Below are positions 4,166 through 26,278 of a stretch of DNA of 43,115 nucleotides, piece by piece (within the stretch, counting starts at the first letter, position 1; each line of letters starts with the position of its first letter). The DNA comes from Pelomyxa schiedti (taxonomy: Eukaryota; Protista; Evosea). The position numbers and the translations under genes were made by a program. Under the pieces are notes generated by a model. That model worked only from the letters and a program-made list of their open reading frames with translations, did no database searches and was not told where the DNA came from. The DNA lies in NCBI GenBank assembly GCA_020536535.1, contig JAHLWZ010000399.1, positions 1 through 43,115 on the forward strand. The letters run 5' to 3'.

Positions 4166-4520
4166 ATCACCATGTCTTCCCAACAATATTTGCATATTTA
4201 TGACCTTGTTTTGGTTGAGAGACAGCCCTGCAAAGAAAGCAATTTTTTATATTTTCGAGTAAGCTCCATCTTTGAGTTAATATTTGATACACAGAAGTCT
4301 CGTTCATCTTCTTCCTGACAGATACTCACTACTATCTCTACTAGGCAAGCCTTCAACCTCAATTACATCCTCTTGAAACCCCACATTTCAAGTCCCGTCG
4401 AATTTTGTGTGGAGCCAGGTGAAGTGGAACAAATCAAAGGGGTTGGCTTTGAGAGGGAGTTTGCTGTCAAATCATCCTGACACCAACACCGGAAGAGGAA
4501 AAAGAATTTCATTTTTTGAA

Positions 4521-7500
4521 TCACCCCAAAGACTCAACAAATTTTGTGGCACTTGATAGAAATGCTCCATGATCCAGAGATAGTCTCCTGGCTTCCTTAT
4601 TGGCCCAGCTCATTGCTTTTTGGTAGAGCAGCTGCCATTCCTCTTCTAGTGCTGCTAGAGCTACTTTCAAGTACGCTATGGGTGTGGATATTAGTAGTGA
4701 CTACAAGAAATAGAGAGACGGGGATTCTTTTGGTACCAAGTACAATGTGAGAAACCCATAGGCAATCAAGCTCCTCCTTTGTAACTGGGCGAGTTGTTGA
4801 TGTAGGGAGTATCACAGGTGGGGGAGTGGCACTTTCCCACTGGAAGCCCATCAGTTCCGCAACCTGGTCAATGCAGGTGTGCGGCCACGAGCCATCAGCC
4901 CGTTGGAACATGATAAGCTTGGATAGAAGTTGGTGTTGATCCAGAGTTTTGCCAGATGGAGGCGAGGTTGTGGCATTATTAGTACTACAAGGAGTAGTGG
5001 CAGTAGGGTCGATAGGTGTTGCCGATGAGCTTGTGGTACATGTTTCTGGAGTGTGTTGTGTGTCACATGGGGCAGCGGGAGTTGATGTGTTAGGTAGGGT
5101 GCCTGTTGTTGGTTGTGGTGATTCTTTGGGGGCATCATCGGGAGAGGGTGCGGGTGTAGTTGAGGATATTGGGGTTCGTGTTGTGGTTTGTGTGAGTGCT
5201 GGTGGATTGTTGCTTGTTGGACTGGCAGGGCTTGAGAAATTGTTCACAGCAGAAACCACTGAAGCAAACAGACTTGTAATGGAGACTTTTGCTTGAGATA
5301 ATAATTCTGCTCCTTGGGTGAGGAGATCACTTGTTCCCGACTTTTGTCGCAACGGTGTCTGTCGGCGCCTGAAGGAGGAACCAGCTCCCAGAGATTCAGT
5401 GGTGGCAATGACTTGCTCGATTTTTTCCCCACGTTCGAGCACCTTCTCAATATTTTGGGTCACAATGCTCCTCGTTCCCTCGATCTCTGAGCGAACTCTA
5501 AATCAGGAACTCCATGTTAGCGCAAATGTGTGCATTACTGAGGAGGAAAAACCTAGTGACCCTGTCCTCCCATGTAGACTGAAAAGCATCAAAAGTGGGA
5601 CATCCAGTTGCAGCGGGAACTGGGGAAGAGGTTATAAGAGCGTGAGTCATAGAGCCCGATGCAGAATCTGTCCTCGCGCATTCTGCTACATAAGATGTCT
5701 CTGAACACAGGACACCGTATTTGCACGAAATGGTAATCATCTCGTTTTTTGCAGCTGTATTTCCAGCATTCTCCAGCTCCAGTATGCGAGTTCTATTTGT
5801 TTGAGTAATTAAAGAAACTTAAGCGCATTTTTGGAACCGTGCCCCATGACAGTGGAGTGAATCCCCTTCAACAACCTCAAACTCGGAATGTGGAAGTGAG
5901 ACTTCGATGGGATTGTTCCCTCCTCTCCCAGTTACAATTATTTGCCCATCCTTGTGACTCAGAATCCTTTTTGAGAGGCTTCATTGGTAACTGGGCGCAA
6001 AGTATAGTGAGTACCTTCCGTTGGAATAGGCGAACACAAATTTGGAACTATGATTGAAGGTACTAAGATTTGAAGGGTAGTAAACCGAAGTGGGATATCC
6101 CCAGTTCACACTAACATCCTCGATTTTACATTCTAGGGCGTATGAAAGCAATCTCATAACCTTGCAACATGTTATGTACAGTGTATTTTAAAGTGGTATA
6201 CTGAAGGTTCAATCCGTTCATCTTGCAACACAAAATCTGCAAAGCCGTTGCCTCGCTCAGCCAAACCAGTCACCAACTCTCTGCAGCAATCTCCGATCCC
6301 CAGTGCGAAAACTGTGCAATCATCACGGTGATGTCTTAGCGAGACTGCCTCGAATACAGATGAAGTATCCTCCACTGCGCCATCAGTGATCACAATCACC
6401 TTCCTGCAAAGAATATTCAACAATTATACTTTATTTCTTGAACAAGTACCTTGAGAAATTAGGAGGGACAGGTTGTTGTAGAACATCTCTGAGTGGAGCC
6501 AAAAGATTAGTGCCACCCAAGTCAGCCTGGATAGCAGAAACCGCAGCACTGGCAATTTCAAGCTGCTGTTGGGTATAAGGAACGGAAGTAGGGAACATTT
6601 TCACAAAAGTGCTTCCGAATCTTTGGGGAAAGTTCATAGCATTAAGGAAAAGATAAAACAAAGATGCAAAAATGGTACCCCACAACGTTAATTCTGTTAC
6701 CAACCTTGAATGATGGAGTTAATGTAGAGTTTCGCACATGTAAGTATTTCAGGGTGAATTTGATACAGGTATTGAGCGCAAGAACAACTGCAGGGATAAA
6801 ACTGCTTGTTCAATTTGATGGCCTGCCATAGAACCACTCCTATCCACAAGAAAAACCTTCATAGGTAGTAAGGAAAAAAGTCATGCAAAGAAGAGGGAAT
6901 TATAACTAGCTCTGTATTTATAGTCTCTTCAATGGAAATGCTGGGAGTGAAAAGAAGAGCAAGACATGTTGTATCACTGGCAGAGTTGTACTCGCCAATG
7001 CAAGATAAAGGCTTGATCCCTATCATATTCACATTGAGATTAAAGTCCCTCTCCATCGCTGCAAGAGAGAGGGAGACTGTGAAAAGCCTTGCATTGGCTG
7101 AGGCCGTTGTGGTGGTGGTAATAGTGTGGGAAGGTGATTCTAAAGTAACATTATCACAGGGTGGTAGCTCTGTTCATCAATCAGAAGAGAACCCCAGGAA
7201 AGAGGACATACTGATATCCATGTTGATGTCCAGGCTAATGCTCGAGCTCCTTGGCAGCAGCGGAACTGAAAAAATGGGTGTGAAAATGTGGAGAAGCGAT
7301 CTCATCAATATCCTGACCTGAACTAGCTGGAAGTACGAATTTCCATATTTGTCCATTGTGAGATGGTTGGACAAGCAATTGACAAATGCAGGTTATAGAG
7401 ACAATAGCCATCAAATGAGGAGCAAGGTTCCCAAGAGAAAGTTTAATAATTTCACCTTTACTCTCGACAAGGGTGGCTGAGTTTCCCCGAGAAATGGCGT

Positions 7501-8307
7501 CATCATATCTGCTTCAAGGTAGCATATAAAATAAATTTATTACCACTCACTTATCGGAAGCTGCATTGCTCTTCATGCACCTACCTACTATTGTCTTCTC
7601 ACCAATTGTTGTGATAAATCGCCGGATAGTTGCCTGTGGTGTTGAAGGGAACCAGAATTCAACCTCCAAGGAGTTGGCACTGTCATTAGTGAAAGTGTAT
7701 GTAATCGTGTATTCCCCCAGAAGGCCTTCCAAGAAGGGGAAATAAAATAACCACGACAAGAAGGAATTAGGAATTTCACAAAGCGGCCAAAAGAAAACAA
7801 AAGGAAATTTCAAAAGCACACACCATTCAGAGTTCCAGTAACAGCTACCTTCGTAAGTGGCACCTCAATCATCGGCCCATTCGTGACCCTCATCACGGCG
7901 TACTGCTTCCTCACCCCTCCCACAATTGCCCCGCCGGCGAACCTCGGCGGCGCCCCCGACACAGCCGGCGGCGGCCTCACAGGCAACCGGTCCAGCATCT
8001 CTTCGTTGAACGCCCAGCACTCACGGAACGACAGAGGCCTGCGAGCAGCGGAGGAGCCGCCGCCGCCGCTTACGTAGTCCGGGGCCCAGCTGCAGCACAC
8101 CATGACGGCGTCGGGTCGGCCCGCCACGTAGAACATGACGTTTTGGTGGATGTACGACTTGCGGATGGAGTTGCCGGGGTCACGCGACACCAAGGACCGG
8201 ACAAGGTAGTCGGACACGGTTGCGATGTTGTTCCCAGGGGTGTGCTCGTAGCGCAGCCGGGTAACCGCCCCATCACTGTCAACTTCGTAAAGGCCCCAGA
8301 ACAACAT
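4521..8307 (-). CDS. Multi-exon VWA5A-like protein: longin-like N-terminus + VIT + vWA + R-SNARE (synaptobrevin) motif + C-terminal helical domain
   Basis: Hand-spliced through GT-AG introns without frame breaks. VIT: FTNDSANSLEVEFWFP...IGEKTIVG...YDDAISRG...LSLGNLAP. vWA MIDAS: FLVDRSGSM, GGTNL, VITDG, VFALGIG. VWA5A tail: ISCKYGVLCSETSYVA, LIMFQRADGSW, EEWQLLYQKAMSW. SNARE: IVTQNIEKVLERGEKIEQV. Stop TGA at 4521-4523. Confidence 0.9.
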
Positions 8308-8437
8308 CGTTTCGTTTTTGAACCGTCAGGGGTTCCGCGAATGTCGCATCGGTTTTTTTGAACCTTCCAAAAACTGGGTTGTGAGAAAAAGAAGAACGAG
8401 AAGTACCCAAGTGCTTTAAAGACTGTACAAAGGGGGT

Positions 8438-10295
8438 TTAGGAATCATCGGGAGTGGGAGAGGCCGCTGATGTGGTGGTAGACGTTGTGGAAGCGGAGGC
8501 GGAAGCGGAGGCAGAAGCAGATGTAGAGGCAGCACCTTCCGAAGCACCCCATTCTTCGGCCCAGTCTTGGAGGAGTTCGTTTATCAGTGAAGACTGTGTG
8601 GCGTGCGTGTTAGCACTGGGATAGTAGTTACCATTTTTCTAACCTGTCGGGTTTTGAAGGCGAGGCGCTGCGGTAAACCTGTGGAAGCAACAAACTGGAG
8701 GGAAAAGTTCCTCCTATCTGATTCCCACCAGGTTATCCTTTCATGTGGGCAAGAGGCAATTTTCTAAGGTTGGGTCAGTGGATAATGGCGGAATAAAACA
8801 GCACACCATGTCCCTGGGTTCAATGACATGGACTCCAAAAAAATTGATTCCAATGATTACTTGACCTTGGTATGGCTTTGGTTTTTGGTGAGGTTGTAGT
8901 AATATCCCATGGAATTAAGAAACACACTTGTTTCCAAAAGCTTTGTTGGGTGGGGACATAAATTGCTGAGAAGAAGGTGCTTCCATAATACCGCCACCTT
9001 CTTGTGGCTTCCAAGTAGAGAAACTTTAGTGAGATTGAGAAAACTCAAAGGTGCTGGAGGAAGACCATAAGAGAGTTTTTGTCTTTCCCGGCATGTCGAG
9101 AGTGTTCGGCATAAATTGCTTGTTCCCATTCCAATTCCTTTCTGGTTTTACGCAAATGCTCAGGAACATACTTTTGCAGTTCAACTCTACAAAGCATGTT
9201 AGGTAAACAAATAAACTCAGAAGAAAAAAAGAGAGATCAGAGTGGCATAGTATTTACACTAAGAAGCCCGGCTTATGAACATCAGGATTATAATCACCAG
9301 AGGCAACGTGTAATTGAATTCCTGCAAGCTTTATTGCAAGAGCCGCGTCACAAGGGTAACAAGATGAGATAACGTTATGTACTGCCTAACCATGTTTAAA
9401 ATAGGATCGTAGTTATGTGAGCGGAAAAACCTGAAGGTAAAAGAGTCGAATTGCGGGCTGTGATTTTGCTTGCATTTCTCTAACCAGGGGAAGCACAGCT
9501 GTTGGTCTAAATACAAGCTTAAACATAGGTGGCTCATGGGAGGTCTCTGTATGTGAGGTCGGTGATATTCCAGAATAAAGAGCGATTACCGGAGCTGCCA
9601 TACTGTGGAATGACAGAGAGAGTGCTTTTTCGTCTCAGAGTGGGTGCTGGCTTACCAGGGAGCGTCTCGAATGTGCGGGCTGGTGTGGCAGTGTTAATTT
9701 TACTAGTGCTCCTCCTGATACAAGGTGAATGTGAGATTAAATAGGGAACACAACGTACACATCTTCCTTGGAAAACATCAACGTTGTTGTTCGCTTTAAG
9801 GTTGCCATGGGTTTAAATGATGGAGGTGGTGTCAATTCAGATTTGAGCGACGGCCACTCGTCAATGACGTCACTTCAGTGCAAGTTAAAGATTTCAGAAC
9901 AAATGAAATGAAAAACCTCAGTTTGGCGTCGGAGAACATGAGAACCTCTGTGAACAGAGTTATTTGCATTTAGGGAATGGCAAACGAAACGTACCCATTT
10001 CAGAAGAGATTCCCCACAGGAAAAAACATTCAGCATCAACTGGACTCAACCCCAGTTTATCAGACATGATAGCCCACAAGTCTTCAACTGTTGTATTGTC
10101 TGGATCTACGTACACCTGTAATGCGTTAAGTGATTTCGGCATAAGCAACTCCGCAAATAAACAACGATAAGAAGAAGGGATAGGTAACTGTCTTGTACGT
10201 GTCATCTACGAGGTAAACACGTAGCAAGATCTGACTCGAAGCCGCCTGATAAGTGATTGGTTTTCTGTTGTAGGAAAAAATAAGCAGTGTACCAT
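8438..10295 (-). CDS. FERM domain protein (FRMD8/KRIT-like), multi-exon
   Basis: Spliced: MAASSQILLRVYLVDDTYKT-VYVDPDNTTVEDLW...FFLWGIS; AIRLFYLQAVHNVISSCYPCD...LAGIQLHVASGDYNP; RWRYYGSTFF; VIIGINFFGVHVI. Stop TAA at 8438. Confidence 0.85.
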
Positions 10296-22800: not shown

Positions 22801-25344
22801 AACAGTCCTTCCTGATACAGATCCCCAAAAGATACAGGCACAACAGTTGGAAGATAAACCAGGTGGCAGTATACAACTACCTGAAGACAGTGCCTGAAGC
22901 CCCCTTAGCTATCAACTTACCAGGGACTAAATCAGATGAAGGGATTTCACGGTGGCACACAAGCCGACCACTTGTCGAGAGTTCAACAAGTTCCTCCAAT
23001 TGCCTTCGGTTACGCACCTAACAGGAGTGTCAGCGTCAATATAACTTGATAAACTGGCAACAAACTAAAACTTTTATCTGTCTTCGTTCAGCTTGCCACT
23101 AAAAGAAATGTTAGGGGAGGAATGTTTCTGGAAACAACTAACAAGTAAGTGCTCAGCAGGAGTAGGTGATGCACTTGAAACTGGGGTGGTGGATGTGCTG
23201 GATTGTGTGGAAGGTGTACTTGGTATGGAACGGCAAGGACGTGGTGATTGAGGTGGTGGAGAAAGGGGAGGAGGAATGTACTCATCCAGAGGAGGGGGTG
23301 GTATATACATTTCATTTGTGATATGTGATGAAGGAGTGGGTGTTCTGATACGAGATAACAATGTGAGAGGAGGTGGGGGAATAGAACCCTCATTATTTAT
23401 ACAGGTGCTAGGTGGTGCAATATCTTGTAAAAATTCTTCAGCAAGATCTTGCAGGAATATCCCTTCGATGTCACTTGTTGGTGTGAAGAGAGCATGTGAG
23501 ACGACTTGAGTGATGGATGATCGCCTCTTAGATCGGAGAGCAAGGGGGGTTCGAGATCTAGGAGGAGGAATGTCAATCTCATGTGTTGCTAGTCTTGCTT
23601 GATCAGTATGTGGAATTACGGGTATAGGTTGGAATTGCGGTTCTTTCTCAGGGGAAGTGCGAGAGGGTAGTTGTGGTGATGTCTGGATGGTATTTTTTAC
23701 AGTTGAGGGTGAGTTGTGAGAATCCAGTGTGGGTGATGATGAAGGTTGAGTCTGTTTTTGTGGTGCAGGGGATGGGGAACGTGAAGGAGATAGAGAAGGT
23801 GAGGGTGACAGAGAGCTTGAAGAGGAGGATGAGGATGACGATGAGAATGATGCCACCGATGGCAAGGATGTTGACAGAAGAGATGCACAAGAAACAGATG
23901 CCGTGAGTGGCATGAAGGACGGAGGTTCCGCCGCAGCTTCAATAAGGCAAACATCACGGTTCGCACAACCATCGCGCTTGCCTGTGGCCAGACCCATAAC
24001 CTTCTCCCTGGTCAGAACACCCCCAAAGCCCCACAGGTGAGACGTGGATGCTGCCGAACCCATTGCCAGCGACACAGGCAAATTCCCAGTCATCTTGCCA
24101 GTCCCAATTTCCGGGCTGCCGCCACCCACAACGCCAGGCGTGTCCCCAGAGCCCGAACTCGAACAGGAGCCGGAACTCGACCCAGAGCTGCAGCTTCCGC
24201 CGTTCCCAGTGCCACTGCGAGGGCGGTACTGCCTCAGCTGAATCGGCATGGCCTCCGCAGCATCCCCGCCAGCGCCGGGCTTGCCACTGACGCCGCCACT
24301 CTCGTAAGCCCCTGCCCTGCTTCCTCCCGCGTTTCCGCGGTCACTGCTGTTGGTGCCACCACTCCCGCCGTCGTGTGGCGCGTTACTGCCAGAGTTCGGG
24401 ACACCGGCGGTCGACCGGCTTCCGCGCGCGTGGCCGTGGGCGTGCTCGCGTTGGTGCTCGTGCCCGCGCACGTGGCCGTGCGCGTGGCTGCGGCTGCGGC
24501 TGCGGCTGTGGCCGTGGTGCCGCGGGTGGGAAGTGGCGCCGGACGAGGAAGCCGCCGCCGAGGACGACGAAGTCGTGGAGTGGCGCGAGTGGGTGCGCCT
24601 GACCGGCTCACGCACGATGACGACGCCGCTGTCGGCACGGCTGCGTTGGTGGGGCAGCTTATGCGGCGGCTGCTGGGGTGATTGGTTCTGTGCATTGCTG
24701 CTGTCTACTGGTTGGGGTTCCGGTTCCTTTTCTGTGGCTGTAGTTGGTGGTTGTGGTGGTGGAGGTTGTGGAGGTTGTGGTGGTGGAGGTGGTTGTTCAG
24801 CTGTTGGTGTCTGTGCCGGTGTCTGCACAGGAGCTTCGGGTGGTGGTGGTGGTGGACAAACAGGCTCTGTTGGGGTGGGATTGTGGGAGTGGGTGGGGCT
24901 CGCGGTTGGGGTGAGGTGCCGGGACGAGGAGGAGCGGCGGGAGCGGGAGCCGCTGGCTGGGGAGGAGGAGGCCGAGGCCGAGGCGGAGGCGGAGGACGAC
25001 GAGGGGTGGCGGGGCCGCGTCGGGGACGGCATGGCCCCCAGCGGCGGCGGGCCCGGCGACGTGGCGGGCGAGATAGAGGACGGGGAGCACGGCGACGTCG
25101 CCCCGAACGACAAGGAGTCGGTGGACAAGGACAGGGCAAAGGGCAGCTGGGCCAGGGCCGCTTGCGCCTGGGCCTGCGTGGTCTGGGAGTGCTGCCTGCT
25201 GTGGTGGTGGTGCCGGGGCAGGTGGTGGTCCGCCGCCGGCTGGGCAGCTGCGTCGTCGCAGGACGAGGAAGAAGGGGGAACCCGAGCCGCCGTGCCCGGG
25301 GACGAGCTCGGCTCCCCCTCGGGGCGGCCGATTTCGTCCTTCAT
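19830..25344 (-). CDS. Tyrosine-kinase-like (TKL) Ser/Thr kinase with a ~740-aa S/P/G/H-rich N-terminus and a C-terminal PQQ-type beta-propeller
   Basis: Kinase: IAKGASGTVFRG, VALK, EIAIMS.LEHPNVI, HRDLKSQN, DFG, GTTSYMAPE, KVDVYSFG, CWDNEPSHRP. The frame continues through microexons into repeats such as LFVATNGELHTVNCITGKLCWS, NGTKIW, LLDLRTG and GILFCLDMYSG. Confidence 0.85.
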
Positions 25345-26278
25345 CCCTTTTCTTTCGCTGTCGGGTGCACTTTTTTCACTTGTTGTGAACAAACAACGCC
25401 GCCAGTGTCCAACACCCTTGATTTCAACCCAATTGCCCGAAATCGATGGCACAAATTTGGCCTTTGCCGAAAGGGCAAAGGCAACGAAAAATAATAAAAA
25501 AAAACCAAAGCGATGGGGTTCACCAAGGAGATTATCAAGGTGCGCGCTGTACCCGTCCACGTTTTGCTTTCTTTTTGTTAGGATCGTTGTGAGACGGCGT
25601 TCTAAATAAATTGTACATAGGCTGGAAACGGACCTAGGCCAACAACTGGTAAGACCGTGACAGTGCATTGCACCGGCTACGGCAAAAATGGGAACCTCTC
25701 TTTGAAGTTCTGGAGGTATTTAACCTTTTATTTATTTTCATTTTATTCCATTTTTTTTTTTTTTTTACCTTGTTGTTGTTACGGTAACAACATTCCGTTA
25801 GCACAAAGGATCCTGGACAGACACCGTTTACATTCCAAATCGGGCTCGGCAACGTGATTAAAGGTTTGTTTGTTCCCGAAGAGTGAGTTTAGTTACTGTT
25901 TACAGGCTGGGACGAGGGCGTTCTTACCATGAATCTCGGTGAAGTTGCCAGAATTACATGCACCCCTGATTATGCCTATGGTGCTGGAGGTTTTCCGGCC
26001 TGGGGATATCCTTGCAATTAATTCTAACAACATACATAGCTATAGTAATAATCACTCTCATATAAACTGGTGTTTAATCCCTAACCCCTTCCCACAATAA
26101 TGCCAAACTCTACCCTTCTCTTTGAAATTGAAGTACTGAAAATAGCTTGAGCCTCCAACCAAACAATCAAGCTACCATCCAACCCTTTTTCTTCCATTCT
26201 ACAAGAAAATTGAAGCCTCAATTTCTTTACTCAAGATTTCTTTTGTTGCTTTTCTGTTTTGAAATAGAATCAAACACT

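What the first reader, a model, noticed from the sequence alone, without database searches (positions are those of the whole stretch)
4521..8307. Longin-VIT-vWA-R-SNARE fusion: a soluble longin SNARE interleaved with a VWA5A-type module
Seen: one continuous spliced frame starts with a ~108-aa N-terminal domain (MLFWGLYEV...EHTPGNNIATVSDYLVRSLVSRDPGNSIRKSYIHQNVMFYV..PDAVMVCC...RECWAFNEEMLDRL, ~7985-8307). It is followed by VIT, vWA with an intact DRSGS MIDAS, the VWA5A helical region, DRVTRVRSEIEGTRSIVTQNIEKVLERGEKIEQVIATTESL (~5355-5567), a T/P/S linker and the VWA5A C-terminal domain. Known: VAMP7/Ykt6/Sec22 consist of a longin domain followed by an R-SNARE motif with the (E/Q)RGE zero-layer arginine, and VWA5A/PARP4-type proteins consist of VIT-vWA. 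The N-terminus matches the VAMP7-type longin pattern (SYxHxNxxF, D..C, FxxE). Inference: both halves of a longin SNARE are interleaved with a metal-binding VIT-vWA protein, and there is no TM or CAAX anchor. It could act as a tomosyn-like decoy or regulatory SNARE whose longin-SNARE closed state is gated by the vWA module. I know of no described protein with this architecture.
Basis: partly seen in the sequence, partly recalled or inferred. Interest (0 to 1): 0.88.

Follow-up and report, generated by a model that had tools for sequence, protein, structure and literature searches.

The report
Amoeba scaffold displaying unanchored VAMP7 parts
An amoeba gene builds a soluble VWA5A-type scaffold protein that carries, in its floppy loop, a copy of the helix that vesicle-fusion proteins use to pair, plus a worn copy of their front domain; sister genes put other core cell proteins in the same loop, which hints at an undescribed bait or targeting system.

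Summary
The gene is real: 14 exons, 1028 aa, identical to Pelomyxa schiedti KAH3763253.1. VIT, vWA (intact MIDAS) and a VAMP7/8-type R-SNARE motif (Pfam E 1e-9, R746) are confirmed, with no TM or CAAX. One spliced RNA contig joins vWA exons to the SNARE exon. Caveats: exons 1-5 have no RNA cover, and intron 11 was seen only retained or mis-spliced, which truncates the protein before the SNARE. Residues 1-108 are probably a degenerate longin lacking its last helix (ESM 0.92; Foldseek top 50 mostly longin/roadblock, none significant). The vWA-SNARE fusion also occurs in a Pelomyxa paralog, a PARP4-like Pelomyxa gene and Acanthamoeba (UBA instead of longin; intron-free full-length contigs). It is better read as a VWA5A scaffold with a variable loop slot than as an interleaved VAMP7: paralogs with the same longin-like N-terminus carry FERM there, others a broken kinase. 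Best mechanism (0.4): bait display, as in ITIH4; rival (0.3): tomosyn-like regulator. No paper found. The scan noted sister genes earlier in this genome.

The parts
4521..8307 (-). Whole gene, 14 exons (8307-7824, 7725-7551, 7508-7318, 7265-7212, 7169-6907, 6856-6767, 6704-6679, 6620-6450, 6403-6202, 6160-6015, 5966-5838, 5792-5553, 5497-4737, 4675-4521), 1028 aa = KAH3763253.1
   Evidence: RNA joints; 11 of 13 intron positions shared in phase with paralog P0018
7984..8307 (-). Longin-like N-terminal domain, aa 1-108 (strand-strand-helix-strand-strand-strand-helix; last longin helix missing; Y52 lines up with VAMP7 Y45). In the same exon as the first VIT strand
   Evidence: shared by three other Pelomyxa genes
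7391..7857 (-). VIT domain, aa 151-259
   Evidence: Pfam PF08487 E 1.4e-20; exon by exon
6232..6912 (-). vWA domain, aa 388-542, MIDAS DRSGS at 6844-6830 plus T465 and D492
5793..5837 (-). Intron 11 of the model (45 nt, weak donor); seen only retained or as a frame-shifting 50-nt GC-AG intron (5842-5793) in the two RNA contigs that cover it
5630..6231 (-). Hybrid-1b, three-helix bundle and closing VIT strand (aa 543-698) of the VWA5A/ITIH core
   Evidence: alignment to homologues; layout from PMC10539598
5341..5569 (-). R-SNARE motif aa 719-776, zero-layer R746 (5433-5431); layers -7 to +4 canonical, one residue missing between +4 and +6, proline near +8; split by intron 12 near its start
5230..5283 (-). 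Ser-rich, uncharged amphipathic helix aa 796-813 just after the SNARE, also in P0018 and Acanthamoeba
   Evidence: hydrophobic moment 0.48, 0.53, 0.46
4945..5229 (-). T/P/S-rich linker (61% T, P, S over aa 806-905)
4521..4944 (-). VWA5A C-terminal helical domain aa 909-1028 and stop codon
   Evidence: RNA
4494..4520 (-). Short 3' UTR ending in a poly(A) tail at 4494
   Evidence: loose end of 24 T in run X1

Best explanation
A cytosolic VWA5A/Vwa1-type scaffold that displays a VAMP7 look-alike as bait. Shown: the SNARE sits in the roughly 216-aa loop between the closing VIT strand and the C-terminal helical domain; the metal site is intact; there is no anchor; in sister genes the same loop holds unrelated core-cell modules. 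From literature: in Vwa1/VWA5A models the C-terminal domain docks back on the vWA domain, so the loop is tethered at both ends (PMC10539598); in the relative ITIH4 a cleavable bait region triggers a MIDAS-dependent, non-covalent trap (PMC7793589). Inferred: the exposed N-terminal two thirds of the R-SNARE, and the longin-like domain, attract proteins that attack or bind VAMP7 (effectors or proteases of bacteria and viruses living in amoebae); engagement or cleavage of the loop frees the C-terminal domain and lets the Mg-bound vWA clamp the binder, perhaps passing it to ubiquitin machinery (Vwa1 binds an SCF ligase; the Acanthamoeba form has a UBA-like domain). It cannot drive fusion itself.
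For: Loop content varies within one genome: R-SNARE in P0001, P0018 and PARP4-like L031; FERM in L033 and L035, bracketed by core and C-terminal domain; an AGC-like kinase without the catalytic-loop and DFG motifs in L060; WH2 plus Ras-family pieces in L050; calmodulin-like EF hands in P0035 from another organism. Both Pelomyxa SNARE copies have lost register in the C-terminal half. The VIT family is expanded (43 matches on about 34 contigs). SNARE-bearing cores do not group: 0 of 200 bootstrap trees, and a PARP4-like scaffold has the SNARE too. Core is homologous to ITIH4 (E 7e-8), a proven bait-and-trap protein.
Against: No binding or infection data. The Acanthamoeba SNARE is canonical from -7 to +8 and is followed by the same amphipathic helix, which fits an old trafficking role. 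One origin is not rejected (AU p 0.052). ITIH4 is extracellular and in another clade. No signalling domain in this protein. In-frame joining of the modules in L031, L033, L035, L050, L060 is inferred from order, not from RNA. The two RNA contigs over intron 11 do not encode the SNARE in frame.
Confidence: 0.4

Rival explanations
1. Tomosyn/amisyn-like regulator or targeting module: the unanchored R-SNARE takes VAMP7's place in endosomal or lysosomal Qabc acceptor complexes, half-zips and blocks or holds them; the amphipathic helix gives loose membrane binding; the scaffold may hand captured SNAREs to ubiquitin ligases. Other loop modules would aim sister scaffolds at other machines.
For: Motif closest to VAMP8/Nyv1/VAMP7-type R-SNAREs (E 4e-9); layers -7 to +4 intact and the C-terminal layers broken, as a fusion-dead competitor needs; Acanthamoeba copy intact and present as intron-free full-length contigs in at least 13 runs; shared amphipathic helix; Vwa1 binds SCF (PMC10539598).
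Against: Does not explain why the loop repeatedly holds damaged copies of unrelated proteins; no WD40 platform as in tomosyn; no complex formation tested.
Confidence: 0.3
2. Tolerated passenger: exon shuffling drops domains into a disordered loop that accepts anything; the Pelomyxa SNARE and longin are decaying and much of the mRNA is truncated at intron 11.
For: One-residue deletions in both Pelomyxa motifs; highly diverged longin; aberrant intron 11 in both RNA contigs; allele differences include several replacements, one (A755T) in the motif.
Against: Motif still scores above the Pfam cut-off in paralogs that are only about 39% identical in the core, and in Acanthamoeba; hydrophobic layers are kept while the rest of the loop is unalignable.
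Confidence: 0.15
3. One reading: longin and SNARE of one VAMP7 ancestor fold into the closed state across the vWA module, and metal or ligand binding at the MIDAS opens it.
For: The alpha1-beta3 region and Y52 (VAMP7 Y45) and the N-terminal SNARE half, which make the closed state (PMC10743575), are the best-kept parts; in the ITIH-type fold the closing VIT strand returns next to the N-terminal VIT part, so longin and SNARE may lie close (inference); both P0001 and P0018 keep the pair.
Confidence: 0.1
4. Gene-model artefact: exon 1 or the SNARE exon belongs to another gene.
For: No RNA over exons 1-4; in-frame intron 11 not seen; exon 1 is GC-rich (GC3 0.79 vs 0.42).
Against: The longin-like part and the first VIT strand share one exon; the upstream gene's mRNA ends at 8396-8422; one RNA contig joins vWA and SNARE exons; paralog P0018 has the same order and 11 shared introns; Acanthamoeba has the fusion as one intron-free ORF.
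Confidence: 0.05

Closest known systems
VWA5A (BCSC-1) / Dictyostelium Vwa1, intracellular VIT-vWA proteins (PMC10539598)
   Same: VIT, hybrid, vWA with MIDAS, three-helix bundle, closing VIT strand, long disordered loop, C-terminal helical domain; no signal peptide.
   Different: Extra longin-like N-terminus, and an R-SNARE plus amphipathic helix in the loop; that paper mentions no SNARE.
VAMP7 / longin R-SNAREs
   Same: R-SNARE motif of VAMP7/8 type with zero-layer arginine; longin-like N-terminal domain with the Y45-equivalent tyrosine.
   Different: 610 residues between the two parts, last longin helix missing, broken C-terminal layers, no TM or lipid anchor.
Tomosyn / Lgl / amisyn soluble R-SNAREs (own knowledge)
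   Same: R-SNARE motif without a membrane anchor on a larger soluble protein.
   Different: No WD40 propellers or PH domain; motif is internal, in a loop, and VAMP7/8-like rather than C-terminal and synaptobrevin-like.
ITIH4 bait-and-trap inhibitor (PMC7793589)
   Same: Homologous VIT-hybrid-vWA core (E 7e-8), intact MIDAS, exposed region between core and C-terminal domain.
   Different: ITIH4 is secreted, has another C-terminal domain and an unstructured protease bait; trapping is not shown for this protein.
PARP4 (vault PARP)
   Same: Closest solved VIT-vWA core (E 4e-20); a Pelomyxa PARP4-like gene also carries an R-SNARE (L031).
   Different: This gene has no BRCT or PARP catalytic domain.
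Acanthamoeba castellanii XP_004367670 / ELR22414 (uncharacterised)
   Same: VIT-vWA-R-SNARE-amphipathic helix-C-terminal domain, 30% identity, no TM.
   Different: UBA-like instead of longin-like N-terminus; canonical SNARE layers; core groups with SNARE-less Pelomyxa UBA paralogs (support 88/96).

Membership tests
VWA5A/Vwa1 intracellular VIT-vWA proteins | VIT domain followed by vWA domain | tested here: met
   Pfam E 1.4e-20 and 2e-30
VWA5A/Vwa1 intracellular VIT-vWA proteins | Complete MIDAS (DxSxS, T, D) | tested here: met
   D394 S396 S398 T465 D492, invariant columns
VWA5A/Vwa1 intracellular VIT-vWA proteins | C-terminal helical domain after a disordered loop; no signal peptide | tested here: met
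   aligns with homologues; no hydrophobic N-terminus
VAMP7-type longin R-SNARE | R-SNARE motif with zero-layer arginine | tested here: met
   PF00957 38 bits over cut-off 26.4; R746
VAMP7-type longin R-SNARE | All 16 layers in register | tested here: not met
   one residue missing between +4 and +6, proline near +8
VAMP7-type longin R-SNARE | N-terminal longin fold (five strands, three helices) | tested here: inconclusive
   ESM 0.92 Longin; five strands and two helices in longin order; Foldseek VAMP7 longin E 7.7e-3, rmsd about 11 on a pLDDT-61 model; no Pfam hit; HMM score no better than the reversed sequence
VAMP7-type longin R-SNARE | C-terminal TM helix (or CAAX, as in Ykt6) right after the motif | tested here: not met
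VAMP7-type longin R-SNARE | Longin folds back on the SNARE (closed state) | not testable with these tools
Tomosyn/amisyn soluble R-SNAREs | WD40 propellers (tomosyn) or PH domain (amisyn) before a C-terminal motif | tested here: not met
   no such Pfam hit
Tomosyn/amisyn soluble R-SNAREs | Forms a non-fusogenic complex with Q-SNAREs | not testable with these tools
   needs multimer modelling or biochemistry
ITIH4-type bait-and-trap inhibitor | MIDAS-dependent capture after engagement of the exposed region | not testable with these tools
   only the intact MIDAS and the loop position were checked
PARP4 | PARP catalytic and BRCT domains | tested here: not met

The most novel reading that the evidence does not exclude
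Amoebae run an intracellular bait-and-trap system on VWA5A/PARP4-type scaffolds: a tethered loop shows disabled copies of core host proteins (here VAMP7 parts; elsewhere FERM, kinase, Rab) to catch symbiont, bacterial or viral effectors through the vWA metal site, a protist counterpart of plant NLR integrated decoys and ITIH4. It would also give the orphan VWA5A family a mechanism.
Probability: 0.3. Interest if true: 0.9.

Novelty: new variant of a known kind. Interest (0 to 1): 0.62.

Why it matters
VWA5A-type proteins occur across eukaryotes (human VWA5A is a tumour-suppressor candidate) and have no known mechanism. Amoebae that load the VWA5A loop with recognisable modules make the loop's role testable: Acanthamoeba can be cultured, knocked down and infected, and it expresses a clean VIT-vWA-R-SNARE protein. 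Either main reading is new: a third kind of soluble regulatory R-SNARE, or a decoy-display defence system in protists.

Tried and rejected
Operators' rule on spliced models: my joined model was built only inside a local script and never sent to a search; I searched exon by exon by reference, and for full-length searches used the public protein P0001 that a tool returned (identical to the model). Exon 1 alone found no homologue (length-limited, so it says nothing on full-length kin). Exon 13 against 1.84 billion representatives found only itself and ordinary R-SNAREs. Pfam Longin over the own genome does not hit this locus. A profile of the four Pelomyxa N-termini found no further copies and no PDB sequence. 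hhalign against six VAMP7 longins was weak (E 0.026, 0.013, 0.003; probability 2-11%). Both AlphaFold models of aa 1-110 were low confidence (pLDDT 56, 61); VIA-align gave no clear hit (best Z about 5) and the atlas shape search only weak ones. Alignments mixing VAMP7 longins with the full protein misaligned, so no full-length fold was run. The SNARE-motif tree was unresolved (AU p 0.18; it held one wrong-frame row, L001). No hidden SNARE in 72 other VIT-vWA homologues. No phage match. Ten paper searches, including accession numbers, found no description of the architecture; subscription papers are not covered. The promoter scan is irrelevant to a eukaryote.
Full report
Source. The window's genome has 52.37 Mb in 5337 contigs, the figures published for Pelomyxa schiedti (PMC8887013), and the database names the encoded protein as P. 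schiedti KAH3763253.1, 'von Willebrand factor type A domain'.

Gene model. Reading the minus strand gave 14 exons and 13 GT-AG introns of 41-98 nt from 8307 to 4521, 1028 aa. The public protein P0001 is identical. As the operators asked, the joined model was not sent to any search: exons were searched by reference, and P0001, which a tool returned, served for full-length searches. Pfam finds VIT (151-259), vWA (388-542) and Synaptobrevin (719-776, E 1.2e-9). The MIDAS is complete, and there is no TM helix or CAAX box.

Transcript evidence. Contigs of three single-cell RNA runs (one study, one sample) show introns 5, 6, 8, 9, 10, 12 and 13 and a poly(A) at 4494; one 1306-nt contig runs from vWA exon 9 into the SNARE exon. 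Nothing covers 7026-8281. Intron 11 is a real caveat: it is retained in X1 and cut as a 50-nt GC-AG intron in X2, giving 649- and 709-aa products without the SNARE. Contigs drop minor forms, the exon-12 frame of the model is the one homologous to VWA5A, and paralog P0018 has an intron at the same position and phase (11 of 13 shared), so the model's splice is most likely the ancestral one. But how much SNARE-containing mRNA is made is unknown. Exon 1 is not a separate gene: it holds both the N-terminal domain and the first VIT strand, and the upstream FERM gene's mRNA ends at 8396-8422.

SNARE. The motif is closest to VAMP8, Nyv1, Ykt6 and VAMP7 among solved structures (E 4e-9 to 6e-3) and to VAMP7-like proteins in the large library. 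Layers -7 to +4 are canonical around R746; one residue is missing before +6 and a proline lies near +8. Paralog P0018 lacks one residue between +2 and +3; the Acanthamoeba motif is in register throughout. A Ser-rich, nearly uncharged amphipathic helix follows the motif in all three, though SNARE-less P0046 has one too.

Longin. Residues 1-108 have no Pfam hit. The ESM feature search gives Longin clusters at 0.92, ten of ten. Two AlphaFold runs, the second with only the family's own N-termini as alignment, give strand-strand-helix-strand-strand-strand-helix, the longin order without its last helix. About nine in ten of the top 50 Foldseek rows are longin or roadblock domains, VAMP7 longin at E 7.7e-3, but none is significant and rmsd is about 11 on a pLDDT-61 model. 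Sequence tests are weak. Y52 lines up with VAMP7 Y45 (role in PMC10743575). I put a degenerate longin at about 75%.

Relatives. The VIT-vWA-Synaptobrevin order recurs in Pelomyxa KAH3756410.1 (P0018, also longin-like), in Acanthamoeba castellanii XP_004367670 (P0020, UBA-like N-terminus) and in near-identical 1053-aa ORFs on intron-free 3.3-kb contigs from at least 13 runs, which look like mRNAs. A PARP4-like Pelomyxa gene (L031) has an R-SNARE after its core. So the vWA-SNARE fusion is real and spans distant amoebozoans; the three-part longin form is so far limited to two Pelomyxa genes. In the core tree the Pelomyxa pair is one clade (100/99) and Acanthamoeba groups with SNARE-less Pelomyxa UBA paralogs (88/96); a single SNARE clade appears in 0 of 200 bootstrap trees but is not formally rejected (AU p 0.052). 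The tree used 20 rows and left out L031.

The loop is a slot. In Vwa1/VWA5A the core ends with a closing VIT strand, then a disordered loop, then a helical domain that docks on the vWA domain (PMC10539598). The SNARE lies in that loop (aa 699-914). The longin-like N-terminus occurs on four Pelomyxa genes; in two (L033, L035) the loop holds FERM, after the same short Cys-Pro lead-in that precedes the SNARE here and calmodulin-like EF hands in P0035. L060 holds an AGC-like kinase without its catalytic-loop and DFG motifs, L050 WH2 and Ras-family pieces. These joins are inferred from gene order. Earlier scan notes report ubiquitin-E2, actin, eIF5A and Qa/Qc SNAREs in related scaffolds (not checked by me). 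Longin and SNARE therefore vary independently, against the picture of one VAMP7 split by an insertion.

Mechanism. Shown: an unanchored R-SNARE with a broken C-terminal end in a tethered loop of a MIDAS-intact scaffold; it cannot be a fusogen. Inferred, 0.4: bait display. ITIH4, homologous in the core, traps proteases through its MIDAS after they cleave an exposed region (PMC7793589), and the repeated, damaged housekeeping modules fit decoys. Rival, 0.3: a tomosyn-like competitor or targeting module for endosomal Q-SNAREs, favoured by the intact, expressed Acanthamoeba form.

Verdict. A real and undescribed domain combination: a member of the VWA5A/Vwa1 family, not of VAMP7 (anchor and register tests fail) or tomosyn. 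No paper in the library describes it, although the VIT-vWA-Synaptobrevin part is visible in automatic domain tables. New variant of a known kind; interest 0.62.

Noticed in passing
L031 (G000:C4:423000-430500): PARP4-like gene: PARP catalytic-like exons, VIT, vWA, then an R-SNARE (Pfam E 3e-12) and a possible hydrophobic tail.
   Followed up: partly
L033 (G000:C869) and L035 (G000:C1088): Longin-like N-terminus, VIT-vWA, FERM in the loop, C-terminal domain. L033 keeps only the second half of the longin-like domain, behind a talin-like helical bundle (Talin_IBS2B E 3e-4); L035 has a changed MIDAS (DQSVS).
   Followed up: partly
L060:1562-3382 minus (G000:C222): VIT-vWA gene whose loop holds an AGC-like kinase lacking the catalytic-loop and DFG motifs, followed by the C-terminal domain.
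   Followed up: partly
L050:4058-5875 plus (G000:C184): VIT-vWA gene followed by a WH2 motif and Ras/Rab-family pieces, with a P-loop-like stretch after them (possible permutation).
   Followed up: partly
L052:1646-2270 and L058:4046-4805: VIT-vWA genes ending in a CFI-box-CTERM-like motif and a hydrophobic tail.
   Followed up: no
L034 (G000:C242:47753-48535): A partial, recent copy of this gene's vWA exons (77-88% identical), without detected VIT, SNARE or C-terminal domain, beside further vWA fragments.
   Followed up: no
L048 (G000:C841:29953-32355): Intron-less 1308-aa frame with vWA placed before a VIT domain, an unusual order.
   Followed up: no
window 8439-10205 minus: Upstream neighbour is an expressed FERM-domain gene (FERM_M at 8970-9185) ending about 90 nt before this gene's start; FERM is also what fills the loop of two paralogs.
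   Followed up: partly
window 6382-6554: One DNA contig (run X4) skips 171 nt inside the vWA region; allele, paralog or amplification chimera.
   Followed up: no
window 23074-25668 minus: 864-aa intron-less ORF with strongly skewed composition (GC 0.68) and no Pfam hit.
   Followed up: partly
P0035 (Logan contig, organism unknown): VIT-vWA protein with a calmodulin-like EF-hand module in the same loop.
   Followed up: partly
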